From Saccostrea cucullata (lineage: Eukaryota), in contig NW_026921836.1 of the NCBI RefSeq assembly GCF_032062105.1, positions 1 to 64,000 of the forward strand: DNA of 64,000 bases, read 5' to 3'. The translations under genes and the position numbers were made by a program. Of this stretch, positions 15,018 to 45,962 are shown one piece after another. The notes under the pieces were generated by a model. That model saw nothing but the letters and a program-made list of their open reading frames with translations, ran no database searches and was not told where the DNA came from. Positions within the stretch are counted from its first letter, which is position 1. Each line of letters starts with the position of its first letter.

Positions 15018-15978
15018 CCACAGGCTTTCGGATCGCTTGAAAAAAAAATTATGTGTGTAAAAAAAAGAAAAAGGTACTGAACTCTTACACCGGGCACCAA
15101 ATTGCGCTAATGAAATATTTTTACTCACATGCTCTAAAATTCTACTTTCTATTTAAATTTATTCATACATAAACATTCTTCATTTCTACCAAAGCCCATT
15201 CCGAAATTCCATATATTTCTCGAGATATTCTGAAATCAATTTAAAAAATAACCTACTTTCTTTTACTCGACATTAGCTTGGGCCCCTAGCCATTCACATG
15301 TAAACAGACGGTGTTTGAAGTGCGCCGATGAGTTGCATAGTATTTGCAAGATCTTTCAACATTTAGAAATTGATTTCTTACCATGGTTTGTAAGGTTAAG
15401 TCTGCATTAATTCCTTTCGCTAAAAATTAAGTTAAAAACGTCTGCATCAACAACTACACCACCAGTTGATTATGAATGTAAAAGAAGCTATGGTCGAACG
15501 ATTTTTTCCCGGAATGCAATATATACCTTTCGATTTTCAAAACAGTTAGACCGCTAAAATGTTGTTTGACTTAGTAAGATCATATGATCAAATTAGAGAA
15601 AATCCGTGTAAAGCTCGAATGCAAATGAGTAAATATTCATTGAGTTTAGAATAAACTCCGGGGAAAATTTGTCCCATCGTTCCTGCTTAAAAATTAGTGT
15701 AACCCTCCGAAGGCCCAAGTTGATGTCGAGTAAAAAAATTAAGGTCAATTTTGAATTTATTTCAGAATATCTCTAGAAGTAAAAAGAGTTACGGAATGAA
15801 ATTTGGTAGTAATGAAGATTGTTTATATTTGAATAAATATGGGTAAAAAGTAAAATTGTAAAGCATTTGGTTTAGAAGAATTTTATTGGCGAAAGTAGGT
15901 ACCTTATGAAAAGAGTTCCATACCTTTATTTTTTTCCAACACCTCAATTTTTGTTCTAAGCGATTTAAAGGCCTGTGG
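15018..15978. mobile_element. Foldback MITE with ~270-bp imperfect TIRs and 6-bp TSD
   Basis: Ends CCACAGG...CCTGTGG; TTTAGA at 15012-15017 and 15979-15984; arms 15018-15285 and 15712-15978 align as inverted repeats. Confidence 0.85.
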
Positions 15979-39504: not shown

Positions 39505-40949
39505 GTTTATCCAAAATAAAAATGGCGTGACCTTGACATACACGAAAACAACGAAACGATAAATACAGCCTTCTTTATTCCGGCACTTATATTGTGCAGT
39601 CTTTTTTTGCTTTACTTATGCAGTTAGTTGTCATATTCTTGCTAAATACTATCAGGATCGATATCAGTCTGTCTCAAATAGAATTGCAATTTTATCGTGT
39701 GTACATGTACATTTCTTGAAATTGTAAATGTACAAAAAATACAAAAAAGCTTTCCATAACATTAATCTTCTTGACTTTAAATTAGATCATTCAGACACAT
39801 GAATTGTTTTTATTACACAAATCGAAACGAATTGATGATCAAGACTAATTCCCACGGTTATTGGAAGAATTTGGAGACAAATCAATGGAACAAAATCATA
39901 ATATTTTACCCCATTAATTTTCCAGGCGACAATTGATGGCAACATCTTTATATACAATGAAAGTGAGGCCTTATTGTCATTTTATTCTTAAACAATTCCT
40001 ATAATAAGTGTGTAAGTGAGCTGTAAATATTCTCCCCAAGTAATGGAATTAACATCGATAAATAATTTTTCATGGATTTCTTGTATTGGGTTTCTTGTTC
40101 AAAAACATCTCTGAAGTTCATAGTCTCGTCCACTGAATATCTTTCTGTTGATGGTCCATTTATTTTGAAAAAAGTTGGATAGTCATATTTATCCTATGTT
40201 TACCCCTTTATCTCGTGGATATAGCTCATGCTATATCGTTTTCATATCCCACACAGAAATGCAGATATGACGTCACAAAGGTTTTTGCGTCAGTGTGATG
40301 AAGTAAAATATAGCAGCAATGTAAAACATCGGTTGTGAAGTTTTAAACATGGGATAAAAAGAATCTTCCATGATTTGTAGTTGGATAGTCATTCATTTGT
40401 ATGAACAAGTTTTTAGGAAACAGGCTCTCTCAGCATGTTGATAAATATGAAAGAACATATATATTGTTGGAATGGACTTTTGAGCTCGAATACTGTTCAT
40501 TATTTGCTAATATCACATTCTTCCAAATTTTTCATGAAGGTGTGAACGTTTTACTTTACTGTTCTTATTTGAAATAATAAAATGAAAATCACAGATTGTA
40601 GAATTCAGGAAAAAAAGAATAGACTCAGGGTAAAACTTGATATCATTGAGATGTTGGCCATCTGAAATGGTCCTGCTTTTAGCAATAAACATGAAAATGT
40701 AACGTAGCTTAAAAGGGTTTATTTTGAAGGTGTTTGAGATTAAAGGGGACAAAAAGAATTACTCCCTGAAAAATAGTACATTAAAAAAAGATACTATGTG
40801 GGTTAAGTATGAACCAGATTGGGCCAAGGAGAGAGAAGATATGCTCCGGACAAGAAATCTCGGACGGACAAACGGACAGCTAGATGGACGGACAGACTGA
40901 TCACTATAGGGCGCCCAATGAGCGGGGCACTAATTATACATGTACTGTT

Positions 40950-43417
40950 ATTATTATTTTTCTTCTCGGGAAAATTTTGTCCGCAAATGATCTTGTAAAG
41001 TACACATCCGATTAAGGGGAAACCTTTTTAGGGTAAGTAGGCATGTTATGTAGATTTGCGGAATCAAGGTCATTTTGCGCGCACGTGCTTGCAAGAGCGC
41101 GCACGTGCAAAACTTGAAATGACCAATATATAATGGATATAACCGTAACTTTTCTATTTTTAGACGAAATGTTTTGAAACTCATAATGTAAGGATATATG
41201 AGTAGTATGCACAAGATGACATGGTCAAAATAGCAAAATCGCACGTGCAAGCACGTGCGCTTCGCTCTGATTGGCTGAAACTAAAGTCTCAATATCTTTA
41301 TTGTTTTTTGATAAAATCATTTGAAATTTTGAAAATAGTCATAAATTAGGGAGATCTACAGCCCGTAATAAAAGAAATATTATGAAAGCATGTGCATGCA
41401 CGTGTGCTTGCAAGAGCTCGCACGTGCAACACGAGAAATGTCCAATATAATTGATACAGACGTAACTATTTAAATTATTGATGATATGCTTTAAAACTTA
41501 TATTAGAAGTATATATTAGAAGCATAGACAAGGTGACATGGTCAAAAAAGCAAGATCTCACGCGCATGCACGTGTTCTTTGCTCTGATTGGCTGAAACTT
41601 AAGTCTCAATATCTTTCTTGTTTTTTGACGAAATCCTTTGAAATCTTAAATATAGGCATGCATTAGGATATCCTACAATAAGATATATAGCAATTATTTT
41701 GAAAACGCGTGCATGCACGTGCGCTGCAATCTGATTGGCTTATGCTTTAAATAGCTATAACTCCCTTGGTTTTCAACCAAACAGGATGGGATTTGGAACA
41801 TGGATAGATATAATGGACATCTACAAGAAGACATGGTCACCATGCACATGCATACACGTGCATGTACGTGCGCTGCAATCTGATTGGCTGAAACTTTGAA
41901 CAGCTATAACTCCCTTGGTTTTCAACCAAACGGGGTGGGATTTAGAACATAGATAGATGTAATGGACTTCTACAAGAAAGTATGGTCGCCATGCTCATGT
42001 GAGCACGTGCGTGCACGTGAAATGAGTAAAATCAAAAATACACTTGAACTAGCGTATTTTTTAATACGTTTGGATTAAATACTTTGATATTTAGTATATT
42101 AAAATCTATATATTGTAAAGAAAAGATTGTATGGTCATTACGCACATGCATTCACATGCGCACGCGTGCAATGCTAAAATTTGAATGAAATTGGTACACT
42201 TCTGGGTAAACGTTGTTAAAGTCTCAAATGCGTAGAGTTTGTCTTATTTAATGAAGCTTATAGGGAATATGGCACCAAAAGGGAGTTGGGGAGCGTTTGG
42301 GGAACATCTGTAACGGTCCCCGTTACAATTAGCACTAGTTATTATTATTTTTCTTCTCGGGAAAATTTTGTCCGCGAATGATCTTGTAAACTACACATCC
42401 GATTTAGGTGAAATGTTTTTAGGGTCAGTAGACATGTTATGTAGCTTTGCGGAACGAAGGTCATTTTGCGCGCACGTGCTTGCAAGAGCGTGCACGTGCA
42501 ACACGTGAAATGACCGATTTAATTTATATACGCGTAACTTTTTACATTTTTGATTAAATGCTTTAAAACTTATAATATAAGGATATATTAGTAGCATAGA
42601 CAATATGACATGATCAAAATAGCAAGATCTCACGCGCATGCACATGCGCTTCGCTCTGATTGGCTGAAACTAAAGTCTCAATATCTTTCTTGTTTTTTGA
42701 CAAAATCCTTTGAAATTTGGAACATAGCCATGCATTAGGATGTCCTACAATATAATATATAGCAATTATCATAAAAACACGTTCATGCACGTGCGCTGCA
42801 ATCTGATAGGCTGAAACTTTAAATAGCTATAACTCCCTTGGTTTACAACCAAACGGGATGGGATTTGGAGCATAGATAGATATAAAGGACTTCTACAAGA
42901 AGGTATGGTCACCATGCACATGCATGCACGTCCGTGTACGTGCACTGCAATCTGATTGTCTTAAACTTTAAACAGCTATAACTCCCTTGGTTTACAACCA
43001 AACAGGGTGGGATTTAGAGCAAAGATAGATGTAATGGACTTCTACAAGAAGGTATAGTCACCATGCTCATGTATGCACGTGGCACGTGCGTGCACGTGAA
43101 AAGAGTAAAATAAAAAATACACTTGAATGAGCGTATTTTTTAATACTTTTGGATTAAATACTTTAATATTTAGTATATCAAAATATATAGATTGTGTAGA
43201 CAAGATGAGATGGTCATTACGCACATGCATTCACATGCGCAAGCGTGCAATGCTTAAATATGAATGAACTTGGTACACTTCTGGGTAAACGTTGTTAAAG
43301 TCTTAAATGCATAGAGTTTGTCCTATTTAATGAAGCCTCCAACTAACATGGCACCAAAAGGGAGTTGGGGAGCGTTTGGGGAACATCTGTAACGGTCCCC
43401 GTTACAATTAGCACTAG
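40950..43417 (+). mobile_element. Two head-to-tail Helitron-type non-autonomous elements (40950-42338 and 42339-43417)
   Basis: Each starts ATTATTATTTTT(T)CTTCTCGGG and ends with a TGTAACGG-TCC-CCGTTACA hairpin plus ATTAGCACTAG; internal ~120-bp subunits. Confidence 0.85.
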
Positions 43418-43426
43418 TTACTATTC

Positions 43427-44413
43427 TGTTAGGTAGAATATTTATACATATTTTATTTTGCAGAATGGGAAATACAGTGTAGATATTTGTTTTTGTAAAT
43501 AGCGTTTGGTAGATTTTTTTAAAATGCAGTTATGTGTTTTCTTATGCGAGGGCGCATAAAGCTGGGGTGGGGGTGATGAAGTGGAAAGCTGTATTTTATA
43601 TTTTTATTATTGCGAGAATTATCGCCCTTGTCATTATTAATTACTTATTATGTTCGTTAAAAATAAATACTTAATTAGTGTTAAATTCCAATTAAAGTGA
43701 TCAATTATAATCATTGTATGTTTCTTTAGTTGGTTTGATAAAGATTTGTTGATGGGAAGCTTGATTAGTGTTTTAATTAGTTTGTAAATAAATAATCACT
43801 AAGTATTTGATATGGTACTTGGGATACATAGGGTTTTTACTGCCGTGTATACGAAAAAAGGTTCTAGAGGTAAAACTCGACAAATCTTGTTAGTGCATAT
43901 AAGTGTGTGGACTTCCCTGCTTATATTGTACTGTGATAAGTGATAAGTGTGCTGTCATCCCTGCTTATTACTTGACAGAGTGTGTGGTCATCCCTGCTCT
44001 GTAATTGGCATCTCATAGCAGCAAGTGTGCGGACATCCCTGCTTGTTGCTGCGCAAGATCAGGTGTGTGGACATCCCTGCATGCATCTTGTGGTAGAGCA
44101 TTGGTGTGCGGACATCCCTGCCAGTGTCTCTAGACTAGAACCGTATTAGTGTCAAATGTGTGGTCATCCCTGCTTGTCACTGCGCAAGGGCGAGTGTGCG
44201 GTCATCCCTGCTTGTCTCTTGTGGAAGTGCGCTGGTGTGTGGACTTCCCTGCCAGTGTCACTTGTTCGCTACCAGTAAAGACCTTATATATCGCAGTACA
44301 AAGTGATTAAGACTGCGCATTGTACATATTTGCAGCATCTCAAGGCTATCCGTTTTTATCACGGGTACGAGCCTGCGGGGGTTCACAGGCAGTGACCTCC
44401 CTTGCACGTTACA
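43427..44413 (+). mobile_element. Probable LTR fragment carrying a hairpin array; 5' boundary uncertain
   Basis: Ends ...GCACGTTACA exactly at the duplication breakpoint; AGTAAA poly(A)-like signal at 44274; no clean TSD. Confidence 0.5.
43903..44252 (+). repeat. Nine 18-bp repeats GTGTGYGGWCWTCCCTGC separated by 15-34 bp spacers
   Basis: Repeats start at 43903, 43947, 43980, 44025, 44063, 44104, 44156, 44194 and 44235. Confidence 0.95.
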
Positions 44414-45962
44414 ATACATGAGAAGAGGTTATTGTCCTTGTCAACATTTTGAAATTTTTACTTAATAATATTTATCATTAAACCTTTTGAAAAGCATTCT
44501 TATCAAAATTATTGTTCTACTTGGCATGAAGTTTAATTAATTAATTTTTTTTTTACAAAAACCTATGACATCAAGGGCAGACTATTTTATTGGTTGAATT
44601 CGACTTTTCCACTCGGCGAGCAGAGTTTTGATGCTGCTCACGGGTACTAAAGAAAAAAGACGAGCATCTCAAGCATGTCATATATGGTTTTGAAGATTAA
44701 TTATCGCGGAAGAAATAGGTATCAACATTTTGTCAGCGCATTTTCTCTCCAGTGTAAATGAGTGTGATTCTGGTGGAGGGGGTACTCTGAGTTTACTCAG
44801 AGTTACAGAATATACTTGTGTCATGAATATGTCATGGGTTAGAAATTATAACCGGAACCAGTGCTTGTGAGTAACATTCAATTTGTTTTTAAACATTGCA
44901 TTCAACTTATTTATGGTTTACAACAAAGGCATATCATTATCTCTCTAAACATTTGGAAGATATTCATTGTTCAAATAAATTTGAGAAATGATATATTAAT
45001 ATAATATATATGGAGTCAATGCACACATTGACCTACATTGAATTCATATTTGTGTAAGAGTTAATTTGGAATTGGGTAAAATATGTATGGTTTTGATAAA
45101 ATCCCTTATTAATTCCTGGAAAAACAGGTTTTTGTTGGTGACGTCAAAGGACACATCTGATGACGTCTAAAAGTAGGCTTCTATATTTCTCTATAAGCTT
45201 CTCTCTTAAGAAATTTACAGATGTTAAAACTTTGCAAAAAGGACATGTAAAGGGGTTCTTCGAGTTTTGTAATCTTCACCACTGACTAGTTTTTTTTCTA
45301 GAAGTTTAAACGACGAATATATTTGTCCAATTTTTAGCTGGGATGGACAACATATCTTAAACTTTAGTTTGGAATTAACGAATTTTAAAATGTGAATATG
45401 AATATATTTATTTACCCCACTCCGAAGGAAGAAGTACACTGTTTTGCCCTGTCTCAGTGTCTGTCCATTTTTTTTTACATGCAGTAAACGCCATCAAAAA
45501 ACTAAATCGGAATTCTACAATTCTTTGAAGACTACTATTGGAAGCAACAAAAACCTTTTTTTTCAAAAGTTTGCATTGTGATTTCTCTGTATAAATGCTC
45601 CCTACACTTCTAAAATATTGAACGCGCAAACTCATTTTTGAGCTGTTTTTACATCAAAATTCAAATTGGTTTAAGTGATTACATTTAGAAATTGTTTAGA
45701 GATATTGACTTTCTTTAATTTAGTACTTTGAAGGGTAATTATTTCCACCACATGAAGTGACCTTTTAGATATAATTAAATCTACATTAACTTCAAAGGAC
45801 ACAGGACCAACGATCTATAAGTGACATTTAACATTTCGATAGTTAATTGTTATGAAATAAGCGGTTCTTTATATATAATCTACTTGTAGTATCCCGCCCA
45901 TTCCTACCATACGTAACTTTGATTTCGTTACTTCTATAGCGACAGAGATAATTCGGAACAAG

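What the first reader, a model, noticed from the sequence alone, without database searches (positions are those of the whole stretch)
43892..44258. Nine hairpins with a shared 18-nt apex on stems of differing sequence: candidate multivalent structured RNA in an LTR-like element
Seen: nine copies of GTGTGYGGWCWTCCCTGC with 15-34 nt spacers, superficially CRISPR-like. The sequences on either side of each repeat are complementary, so each repeat caps its own stem. Examples: AAGTGATAAGT/GCTTATTACTT (11 bp, R2), AGCAGCAAGT/GCTTGTTGCT (10 bp, R4), ACAGAGT/GCTCTGT (R3), GCATTGGT/GCCAGTGT extended by TAGA/TCTA (R6), GCGCTGGT/GCCAGTGT (R9), AGTGCATATAAGT/GCTTATATTGTACT (R1). Stem sequences differ while pairing is kept, and most non-Watson-Crick pairs are G-U on the + strand, which points to RNA of that strand. 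The apex can close as GG-[WCWU]-CC. R7-R9 are a 131-bp duplicate of R4-R6. The array lies just upstream of an AGTAAA signal and a TTACA end. Inference: a protein-binding array (packaging, export or sponge, by analogy to CsrB-type arrays) or a set of processing substrates. I do not recognise it as a described family.
Basis: partly seen in the sequence, partly recalled or inferred. Interest (0 to 1): 0.85.

Follow-up and report, generated by a model that had tools for sequence, protein, structure and literature searches.

The report
Retrotransposon LTR array of identical-tipped RNA hairpins
A young Ty3/gypsy retrotransposon of this oyster-like bivalve carries nine RNA hairpins in its long terminal repeat that share one invariant tip on different, co-varying stems, and a Pacific-oyster relative has the same tip, so it is probably a repeated docking site for one RNA-binding protein.

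Summary
Window 43891-44262 holds nine adjacent hairpins. Each is capped by GTGTGYGGWCWTCCCTGC (9 matches, 0 expected by chance).

- **Strand:** only the + strand folds well (-134.7 kcal/mol, z -2.9, against -93.6, z +0.1). Stem mismatches are 21 G.U against 0 A.C.
- **Parent element:** the array lies in the 837-bp LTR (43577-44413) of a 5'-truncated copy of a recently active Ty3/gypsy family. The family has paired LTRs, a 4-bp target duplication, a PBS, a PPT and gag-PR-RT-RNaseH-IN. The genome holds about 1,280 motif hits, and every locus I examined belongs to this family.
- **Cross-species conservation:** a Magallana gigas relative (Gag 54% identical) has seven hairpins at the same LTR position. 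The tip is the same and the stems are entirely different. Across the 16 hairpins, 92% of cells pair (47-56% when slid), and 0 of 500 shuffles reach the covariation score.

My reading is a cis-acting, multivalent protein-binding RNA of the sense genomic transcript. The most likely partner is the element's own Gag/NC, for packaging. A host export, stability or translation factor is the main rival.

Not settled: whether the array lies in R or U3, and whether it is transcribed at all.

No Rfam family matches. The scan has noted comparable hairpin arrays in other retroelements of this genome (Ngaro, another Gypsy family), but not in this family.

The parts
43415..43576 (+). Last ~160 nt of the internal region of a 5'-truncated element copy, ending in the polypurine tract AAAGCTGGGGTGGGGGTGA (43558-43576)
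   Evidence: BLAST to full elements L031 and L065 begins at 43415 and nothing upstream matches. The same PPT precedes the 3' LTR of L031.
43577..44413 (+). 837-bp LTR (TG...CA) of a Ty3/gypsy retrotransposon family. This copy is 90-93% identical to the other copies.
   Evidence: Paired LTRs 98.8-99.8% identical flank gag-PR or gag-PR-RT-RH-IN in other loci.
43821..43833 (+). Upstream TATA-like box. It is decayed here (GGGATACATAGGG). Other family copies and M. gigas have ATATATAGG at this place.
   Evidence: this is an island of identity with the M. gigas LTR in an otherwise unalignable region, about 65 nt before the first hairpin.
43869..43881 (+). Conserved block GGTAAAACTCGAC about 40 nt after the upstream TATA-like box. 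It is a candidate transcription start region.
   Evidence: GGTAAAACT is found in 23 of 34 family copies and in M. gigas (GGTAAAACTTGAAC) at the same relative place.
43891..43933 (+). Hairpin R1 (apex 43903-43920)
43937..43974 (+). Hairpin R2 (apex 43947-43964; this copy has G7 to T in the apex)
43975..44002 (+). Hairpin R3 (apex 43980-43997)
44017..44050 (+). Hairpin R4 (apex 44025-44042)
44051..44093 (+). Hairpin R5 (apex 44063-44080). The stem next to the apex is damaged in this old copy and intact in young copies.
44094..44132 (+). Hairpin R6 (apex 44104-44121)
44148..44181 (+). Hairpin R7 (apex 44156-44173; G1 to A in this copy). It is a duplicate of R4 with compensated stem changes.
44183..44223 (+). 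Hairpin R8 (apex 44194-44211), a duplicate of R5
44226..44262 (+). Hairpin R9 (apex 44235-44252), a duplicate of R6
44274..44332 (+). Signal cluster after the array: AGTAAA (44274-44279), second TATA-like box TATATAT (44285-44291; TATATAA in most copies), ATTAAG (44306-44311; ATTAAA in M. gigas) and GT-rich TTGTACATATTTG (44320-44332)
   Evidence: The layout of TATA, AATAAA-like signal and GT-rich stretch is the general LTR plan described in PMC3601003.
44333..44413 (+). Conserved LTR tail (probable U5) with two predicted hairpins, ending ...CACGTTACA
   Evidence: About 84% identical to M. gigas over roughly the last 110 nt. Within-family diversity is 0.0245. Folds.

Best explanation
The array is a cis-acting structured RNA module of a Ty3/gypsy LTR retrotransposon. 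The sense (gag-strand) transcript folds into 7-9 independent hairpins. Each has a lower stem of free sequence (7-14 bp, rich in G.U) and an invariant 18-nt cap. The cap is predicted to fold as G-C, U.G, G.U, a bulged U, G-C, a bulged Y, a GG/CC clamp and a WCWU tetraloop. Shown here: the hairpins exist, they are + strand specific, their stems covary, their tip is under purifying selection, and they are conserved in position between two oyster lineages. Inferred: the identical tips are repeated docking sites for one sequence-specific RNA-binding protein. I take the element's own Gag (a single CCHC zinc knuckle, nearly identical in the two lineages) as the most likely partner. Several Gag molecules loaded side by side would nucleate assembly on the element's RNA and mark it for packaging, including the RNA of the many internally deleted copies that keep the LTR. 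The different stems let each hairpin fold locally. They also limit exact direct repeats to 18 nt, which should reduce deletions during reverse transcription. The general claim, a selected + strand RNA hairpin array that binds protein, I put at about 0.85. The score given here (0.42) is for Gag packaging as the specific function.
For: - **Hairpins and strand:** + strand MFE -134.7 (z -2.9) against - strand -93.6 (z +0.14). Per hairpin the + strand gives about -15.7 against -8.9 kcal/mol. Stem mismatches are 21 G.U: 0 A.C under strand-symmetric scoring.
- **Stems belong to their own unit:** 0 of 5000 arm permutations reach the real energy.
- **Covariation over 16 distinct hairpins from two species:** 92.4% of cells are paired against 47-56% when slid. 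There are 42 double-change cells against 14.1 in shuffles. The score is 0.526 against 0.167, reached by 0 of 500 shuffles. RNAalifold finds the same structure on its own.
- **Selection on the tip:** it is identical in the M. gigas relative, although Gag is 54% identical, the stems share nothing and most of the LTR is unalignable. Within-family diversity is 0.029 in the tip, 0.065 in stems and 0.137 in the upstream LTR. Shared stem variants give 15 changes to G.U against 4 to A.C (p 0.019); singletons give 10 against 6.
- **Retroelement context:** LTR pairs, TSD, PBS, PPT, gag-PR and RT-RH-IN.
- **Gag as partner:** the capsid-like and NC core is 70-79% identical between the lineages, and the knuckle CYFCRKPGHLRKDC / CYYCRKPGHIRKDC matches at 12 of 14 positions. 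The 5' side of the tip is GUGUGYGG, held by weak G.U pairs and bulges. Retroviral NC knuckles bind exposed guanosines (PMC4576207). Relatives at 36-43% Gag identity lack this tip, which fits an element-encoded partner better than a shared host partner.
- **Known mechanism:** several stem-loops that present one short motif are how coat proteins select genomes in packaging-signal-mediated assembly (PMC6281560, PMC9065705).
Against: - No binding, transcription or packaging data exist.
- The six pairs inside the tip never vary, so its fold is only predicted.
- The position within the transcript is unresolved. One conserved TATA-like box lies upstream of the array and another lies downstream.
- Classical retroviral packaging signals lie between the PBS and gag, not inside the LTR.
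- A tip conserved unchanged while Gag has diverged to 54% overall fits a slowly evolving host protein equally well.
- Within the family, 19 shared transversions break predicted pairs, mostly outermost ones.
- Part of the G.U excess could come from A-to-I editing of the RNA rather than from selection, although that also requires + strand RNA hairpins.
Confidence: 0.42

Rival explanations
1. The array is a docking platform for a host factor. The hairpins recruit a conserved host RNA-binding protein to the unspliced retrotransposon RNA. The outcome would be nuclear export (like the constitutive transport element that recruits NXF1), stabilisation, localisation, or helicase-assisted translation (like the 5' post-transcriptional control element in R-U5 of several retroviruses).
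For: All the structural and conservation evidence applies equally. The tip is unchanged between lineages whose Gag is only 54% identical overall. Retroelements must secure export of full-length RNA, for example the Cer1 gypsy element of C. elegans (PMC10309623, abstract). Location in R or U3 is typical of the Rex, Rec and Rem response elements and lies close to CTE positions (my own knowledge).
Against: The tip is confined to one element lineage. Every motif locus I examined lies in this LTR family. Related Gypsy families in other bivalves carry other motifs or none. A useful host handle would be expected to be shared more widely. No similarity to any Rfam family was found.
Confidence: 0.25
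2. The array is a DNA-level enhancer. The 18-bp units are repeated transcription-factor sites in the LTR promoter region, like NF-kB/Sp1 sites or enhancer repeats of retroviral U3, and the hairpin potential is incidental.
For: If the downstream TATATAA is the promoter, the array lies at about -20 to -400 from that box, where U3 enhancers sit. Copy number changes by tandem duplication, with 7 units in M. gigas and 9 here. The reverse strand reads GGGAWGWCC, loosely Rel/ETS-like (my own reading, not tested).
Against: A DNA site needs no flanking complementarity. Here every unit has its own compensated stem. Mismatches are 21 G.U: 0 A.C on one strand only. All 16 units point the same way. The variable tip positions are the predicted bulge and loop bases, while the paired bases are invariant.
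Confidence: 0.1
3. The array is a replication or 3'-end processing structure. Hairpins in R or U3 would modulate strand transfer, RT pausing and recombination, or use of the nearby poly(A) signal, without a dedicated binding protein.
For: The array ends about 45 nt before the ATTAAR signal and GT-rich stretch. R-region hairpins such as TAR and the poly(A) hairpin have such roles in lentiviruses (my own knowledge).
Against: Structure alone would not require an invariant 14-nt tip across nine paralogues and two species while the stems drift freely.
Confidence: 0.08
4. The array is a precursor of small RNAs, or a CsrB-like sponge transcript that acts apart from the element.
For: Multiple hairpins lie in tandem.
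Against: Stems of 7-14 bp are well below Dicer or Drosha substrates. Every copy I examined sits inside the LTR of one retrotransposon family, and I saw no free-standing copy. No miRNA family matches the region.
Confidence: 0.03

Closest known systems
Packaging-signal-mediated assembly of ssRNA viruses (MS2, STNV, parechovirus, HBV pgRNA)
   Same: Several stem-loops of differing stem sequence each present one short recognition motif for one capsid protein (PMC6281560, PMC9065705). The tip anatomy (single-base 5' bulge, 2-bp GG/CC clamp, tetraloop) resembles the MS2 operator in architecture (my own knowledge).
   Different: Those signals are dispersed over the genome and degenerate. Here they are clustered in tandem in the LTR and almost invariant. 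No capsid binding has been shown, and there is no sequence relation.
Retroviral Psi packaging signals bound by Gag NC
   Same: They are structured RNA in the genomic transcript that offers exposed guanosines to CCHC zinc knuckles (PMC4576207). The element here encodes a Gag with one CCHC knuckle.
   Different: Psi lies between the PBS and gag and is a single complex fold, not a tandem array of like hairpins inside the LTR.
Retroviral export and response elements in or near the 3' LTR (MPMV CTE, HTLV RexRE, HERV-K RcRE, MMTV RmRE) and TAR in R
   Same: They are cis-acting, + strand, protein-binding structures located in U3/R. TAR-type hairpins combine a bulge with an apical loop.
   Different: Those are one large fold or one to three hairpins. 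No accessory Rev/Rex/Tat-like gene was seen here, and there is no sequence or Rfam similarity.
LTRs that carry small-RNA-like modules (Cassandra 5S, Helenus and Ajax; PMC10886601)
   Same: A structured RNA module is embedded in the LTR of LTR retrotransposons, some of them from bivalves.
   Different: Those modules derive from tRNA, 5S or other small RNA genes. This tip matches no Rfam family, and I did not test it for tRNA likeness.
Hairpin arrays noted by this scan in other retroelements of the same genome (Ngaro, loop TATGGTCC; another Gypsy family, CCTGAATAAGGCA)
   Same: The design is the same: a shared loop on covarying stems inside a retroelement.
   Different: The element classes, loop sequences and positions differ. 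Those are unchecked AI notes, except that I saw CUGAAUAAG-capped hairpins myself in Pinctada and Mytilus relatives.

Membership tests
Ty3/gypsy (Metaviridae) LTR retrotransposon, as the parent element | Paired direct LTRs with TG...CA ends and a short target-site duplication | tested here: met
   LTR pairs are 98.8-99.8% identical in L031, L032 and L034. L031 has the 4-bp duplication GTTG.
Ty3/gypsy (Metaviridae) LTR retrotransposon, as the parent element | PBS after the 5' LTR and a polypurine tract before the 3' LTR | tested here: met
   TGGTGGCAGCGGTGGGAT begins 7 nt after the LTR, and AAAGCTGGGGTGGGGGTGA abuts the 3' LTR. The match of the PBS to tRNA-Leu is from memory and was not tested.
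Ty3/gypsy (Metaviridae) LTR retrotransposon, as the parent element | Domain order gag, protease, RT, RNase H, integrase | tested here: met
   Pfam hits: Retrotrans_gag, zf-CCHC and Asp_protease in the gag-PR ORF; RVT_1, RT_RNaseH, Integrase_H2C2 and rve in the 808-aa ORF of L065.
CRISPR array | Near-identical repeats separated by unrelated spacers, in a prokaryote, with a leader and cas genes | tested here: not met
   The genome is a 1.17-Gb eukaryote. The 'spacers' are the two arms of stems that pair across each repeat. The unit lies in a retrotransposon LTR.
CsrB/RsmZ-type protein sponge RNA | A free-standing bacterial sRNA gene with many GGA-containing loops that bind CsrA | tested here: not met
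   It is not a separate gene: every copy I examined lies in LTRs. There is no GGA loop motif and no Rfam match.
miRNA or siRNA hairpin cluster | Stems of about 20 bp or more that yield 21-24 nt duplexes | tested here: not met
   Stems are 7-14 bp plus the tip. No miRNA family matches 43892-44258.
Any Rfam 15 family | A covariance-model match | tested here: not met
   cmscan of 40000-48000 at E up to 1 found no match overlapping the array.
Retroviral Psi | Location in the leader between the PBS and gag | tested here: not met
   The array ends 151 nt before the LTR end, upstream of the PBS.
Retroviral Psi | Specific binding by Gag/NC and a requirement for encapsidation | not testable with these tools
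   This needs binding and packaging experiments.
Packaging-signal (PS) arrays | Multiple stem-loops that share a recognition motif on variable stems | tested here: met
   16 hairpins, an invariant tip and covarying stems.
Packaging-signal (PS) arrays | Binding of the cognate capsid protein, and dispersal along the genome | not testable with these tools
   Binding could not be tested. Dispersal is not met, because the hairpins are clustered in tandem.

The most novel reading that the evidence does not exclude
Bivalve retroelements carry natural, MS2-array-like RNA 'barcodes'. These are tandem hairpins with a lineage-specific invariant tip on deliberately diversified stems, read by the element's own Gag to select its RNA (and that of parasitic deletion derivatives) for encapsidation. 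This Gypsy lineage uses GUGYGGWCWUCCCU. Other Gypsy lineages appear to use CUGAAUAAG-type tips, and per an earlier unchecked note of this scan Ngaro elements use another. If so, RNA-protein specificity codes evolved repeatedly in unrelated retroelement classes.
Probability: 0.3. Interest if true: 0.78.

Novelty: new variant of a known kind. Interest (0 to 1): 0.62.

Why it matters
How LTR retrotransposons outside yeast and vertebrate retroviruses choose their own RNA for packaging or export is almost unknown.

This element offers a compact, strongly supported candidate signal:
- It is a 34-nt hairpin with an invariant tip.
- It is repeated 7-9 times.
- It is conserved between oyster genera while everything around it has changed.

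That makes the question directly testable with a short RNA and one recombinant protein. The result could give a new orthogonal RNA tag and binder pair. It also adds a clear example of selection keeping repeats functional while diversifying their stems.

Tried and rejected
- **More genome sequence:** The 69%, 50% and 44% Gag relatives in this genome were therefore not examined for arrays.
- **Metagenome scan for the 18-mer:** 59 contigs had one match each and none had an array. I take these as chance matches.
- **Closest Gag relative:** the DNA for the 69% relative (ENA) and for a 68% Pol relative was not retrievable. A Logan contig and a JGI contig ended at the LTR edges and gave no transcript ends.
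- **CRISPR, CsrB-type sponge and miRNA cluster readings:** rejected (see Membership tests).
- **Upstream TATATAT at LTR position 21 as promoter:** it is not conserved in M. gigas.
- **The CGTTACA at 43400:** I considered it as a remnant of a 5' LTR, but nothing upstream of 43415 matches the element.
- **Consensus sequences:** Only a 34-column alignment of hairpin units (A1) and a covariance model of it (R1) were made.

Full report
**1.

The motif GTGTGYGGWCWTCCCTGC occurs nine times on the + strand between 43903 and 44252. Seven copies are exact and two have one mismatch. None occurred in 100 dinucleotide-preserving shuffles of the window. Spacers are 15-34 nt. TRF confirms that R7-R9 are a 131-bp duplicate of R4-R6 at 81% identity.

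Folded as RNA, the + strand of 43885-44265 reaches -134.7 kcal/mol (z -2.9; 0 of 100 shuffles as good). Its MFE contains a hairpin over each repeat. The - strand reaches only -93.6 kcal/mol (z +0.14). Each unit folds alone into the same shape, and all nine hairpins persist when the whole 837-nt LTR is folded.

**2. The stems are specific and the structure is selected on one strand**

- I joined the left arm and tip of one unit to the right arm of another. Own arms give a mean of -14.4 kcal/mol in the window copy (-15.7 in a young copy). Chimeras give -10.4 (-10.7). None of 5000 permutations of the right arms reaches the real total.
- I aligned the arms with a scoring scheme that treats both kinds of transition mismatch alike. 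The stems hold 10 G.U and 0 A.C in this family and 11 G.U and 0 A.C in the oyster relative described below. A double-stranded DNA palindrome decaying neutrally should show the two kinds equally. 21:0 therefore points to pairing in a single + strand, most simply RNA.
- A-to-I editing of such RNA could add to the G.U excess, but it would also require + strand RNA hairpins.

**3. What the array sits in**

The array is part of an 837-bp LTR (43577-44413, TG...CA).

- The genome (1.17 Gb, 23,869 contigs) has 1,280 matches to the 16-nt core with at most one mismatch, against 63 for the reversed control. At least 40 LTR copies were scored.
- Of 38 distinct arrays that I extracted, 28 have exactly the same nine-unit spacing.
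- Isolated or odd-spaced hits that I checked are older copies of the same family. A covariance-model search of the whole genome listed only places with the family's characteristic spacing, many of them in the LTR copies listed.
- Complete elements have LTR pairs 98.8-99.8% identical. They also have a 4-bp target duplication, a PBS (TGGTGGCAGCGGTGGGAT) and a polypurine tract.
- They encode either a 677-aa Gag-protease ORF (Retrotrans_gag, zf-CCHC, aspartyl protease) or, in the longest version seen, gag-PR (interrupted by one stop codon in that copy) followed by an 808-aa RT-RNaseH-integrase ORF. This is a Ty3/gypsy family with many internally deleted derivatives. LTR spacings are about 2.3, 3.8 and 6.2 kb.
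- The window copy is an older (90-93% identical), 5'-truncated fragment. It has the last ~160 nt of the internal region plus the 3' LTR.
- The + strand of the window is the sense strand of gag.

**4. Conservation across species**

The closest named relative of the Gag-protease protein is from Magallana gigas, at 54% identity. Its locus L068 is a full element with 779-783-bp LTRs that are 98.5% identical.

- At the same relative position (LTR 333-650), this LTR carries seven hairpins with the same tip, GTGTGCGGWCATCCCTGC. Their lower stems share nothing with those of this genome (for example GAGCACUAGU/GCUGGUGUUC).
- All seven fold much better on the + strand.
- Outside the hairpin tips, only about the last 110 nt of the LTR and two short upstream blocks are alignable.

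I aligned the 16 distinct hairpins (9 + 7) into an ungapped 34-column alignment, A1.

| Measure | As aligned | Control |
|---|---|---|
| Cells forming standard pairs | 92.4% | 47-56% with partners slid by 1-3 columns |
| Cells with both sides changed | 42 | 14.1 in shuffles |
| Covariation score | 0.526 | 0.167; reached by 0 of 500 shuffles |

All eight lower-stem pairs show compensatory changes. RNAalifold predicts the same structure independently.

The six pairs inside the tip never vary. The internal fold of the tip (two G.U pairs, bulged U4 and Y6, GG/CC clamp, WCWU loop) therefore rests on thermodynamics alone. The variable tip positions are the predicted bulge (position 6) and loop positions 9-12, which is consistent with that fold.

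**5. Selection within the family**

Over 34 distinct LTR copies, nucleotide diversity falls in this order:

| Region | Diversity |
|---|---|
| LTR upstream of the array | 0.137 |
| Lower stems | 0.065 |
| 18-nt tips | 0.029 |
| LTR tail | 0.0245 |

Stem variants shared by two or more copies arose in propagating lineages. They give 15 changes to G.U against 4 to A.C (p 0.019). Singletons are mostly post-insertion decay and give 10 against 6, which is not significant.

One pair switches C-G to A-U in eight copies. After the R4-R6 duplication, several pairs were replaced by compensated changes.

Against this, 19 shared transversions break predicted pairs, mainly the outermost ones.

**6. Where in the transcript?**

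The sequence gives two candidate core promoters.

*Upstream candidate.*
- ATATATAGG lies about 65 nt before the first hairpin, and GGTAAAACTYGA lies about 40 nt after it.
- Both are conserved between the two species inside an otherwise diverged region.
- Related Gypsy elements from other bivalves have a canonical TATAAAAG in the first third of their LTRs, upstream of their own hairpins.

*Downstream candidate.*
- TATATAA (TATATAT in the window) lies about 20-25 nt after the last hairpin.
- It is followed by ATTAAG here or ATTAAA in M. gigas, and then by a GT-rich stretch.
- This matches the general order of TATA, AATAAA and GT-rich stretch in LTRs (PMC3601003).

If the upstream box is used and ATTAAR is the poly(A) signal, the array is in R and stands at both ends of the genomic RNA, starting a few tens of nt from the cap. 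If the downstream box is used, the array is in U3 and stands in the 3' UTR only. AATAAA and ATTAAA hexamers in the first 310 nt leave a third option, U5.

My odds are R about 0.5, U3 about 0.35 and U5 about 0.15. In all three cases the sense full-length RNA would contain the array at least once.

**7. How it most likely works**

An invariant, asymmetric, bulged tip on stems of free sequence, repeated 7-9 times in one orientation, is the anatomy of a repeated binding site for one sequence-specific RNA-binding protein.

I favour the element's own Gag, for five reasons:
- The tip is confined to this element lineage in this genome, as far as sampled.
- The tip is absent from Gypsy relatives at 36-43% Gag identity in Pinctada, Ostrea and Mytilus.
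- The capsid-like and NC core of Gag is 70-79% identical between the two lineages that share the tip, and the zinc knuckle is nearly identical.
- The 5' side of the tip is a GU-rich run held by weak pairs and bulges. Retroviral NC knuckles bind exposed guanosines (PMC4576207).
- Multiple stem-loops with a common motif are how several capsid proteins select and condense their genomes (PMC6281560, PMC9065705).

Side-by-side sites would nucleate Gag multimers on the element's RNA. They would also serve the deleted, non-autonomous copies. This step is inferred, not shown.

The main rival is a host factor acting in export, stability or translation. It explains the unchanged tip equally well, and location in R or U3 is typical for such elements.

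A purely DNA-level enhancer is unlikely, given the compensated stems and the 21:0 G.U bias. It could still coexist with an RNA role.

**8. Comparison with known systems and novelty**

No Rfam family matches the array. Literature searches for such arrays in LTR retrotransposons found nothing equivalent. I could not consult Dfam or Repbase.

The thing works like packaging-signal arrays, Psi or response elements, but it is not a member of any of them (see Membership tests). It is best called a new variant of a known kind: a cis-acting protein-binding RNA structure of a retroelement, in an unusual tandem, barcode-like form.

Earlier notes of this scan report similar designs in an Ngaro element and in another Gypsy family of this genome. 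I saw CUGAAUAAG-capped hairpins myself in Pinctada and Mytilus relatives. The design may therefore be general in bivalve retroelements.

**9. Limits**

- There is no expression, binding or probing evidence.
- Only two lineages carry this tip in the data I could reach.

Noticed in passing
L134:2135-2203 (Pinctada imbricata relative, LTR positions 190-258) and L071:15271-15291, 15371-15391 (Mytilus edulis relative): LTRs of related Gypsy elements (Pol 63% and Gag 42% identical) carry two or three small hairpins capped by CUGAAUAAG, downstream of a canonical TATA box. It may be a second tip type of the same design.
   Followed up: partly
L070:13897-14078 (Ostrea edulis relative, LTR positions 79-260): Four perfect-stem hairpins with G-rich loops (GGGCAU, GGGUAG, GGUGU, GGUGGCGA) lie in the LTR of a relative with 39% Gag identity. 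No shared long tip was seen.
   Followed up: no
window 44290-44317: A short hairpin (CGCAGU...ACUGCG) encloses the ATTAAG hexamer. The M. gigas relative can form GUGCAG...CUGCAC around ATTAAA with one compensated pair. It may be a poly(A)-signal hairpin.
   Followed up: partly
window 44341-44405: Two further predicted hairpins lie in the conserved LTR tail (GGCUAUCCG...CGGGUACGAGCC and GCGGGGGUUCAC...GUGACCUCCCUUGC). Both are also present, with changes, in M. gigas.
   Followed up: partly
window 42778-43080: A 149-bp tandem repeat, 2.0 copies at 88% identity, lies just upstream of the truncated element.
   Followed up: no
window 46451-46530: A palindromic stretch matches the mir-4875 and mir-5014 models on both strands, far below the gathering score (38.7 against 90 bits). 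It is probably an inverted-repeat element and not a miRNA.
   Followed up: no
G000 contigs C18714, C7300, C2777 (LTR spacing 2.26 kb); C2739, C3628, C16030 (3.7-3.9 kb); C23417 (6.2 kb): The family exists in at least three size classes. Several short classes keep open Gag or Gag-protease frames, which suggests non-autonomous derivatives that rely on full-length copies.
   Followed up: partly
L031:6559-7059: A 166-aa ORF without a Pfam match lies between gag-PR and the 3' LTR of a deletion derivative. It may be a remnant of the integrase C-terminus.
   Followed up: no
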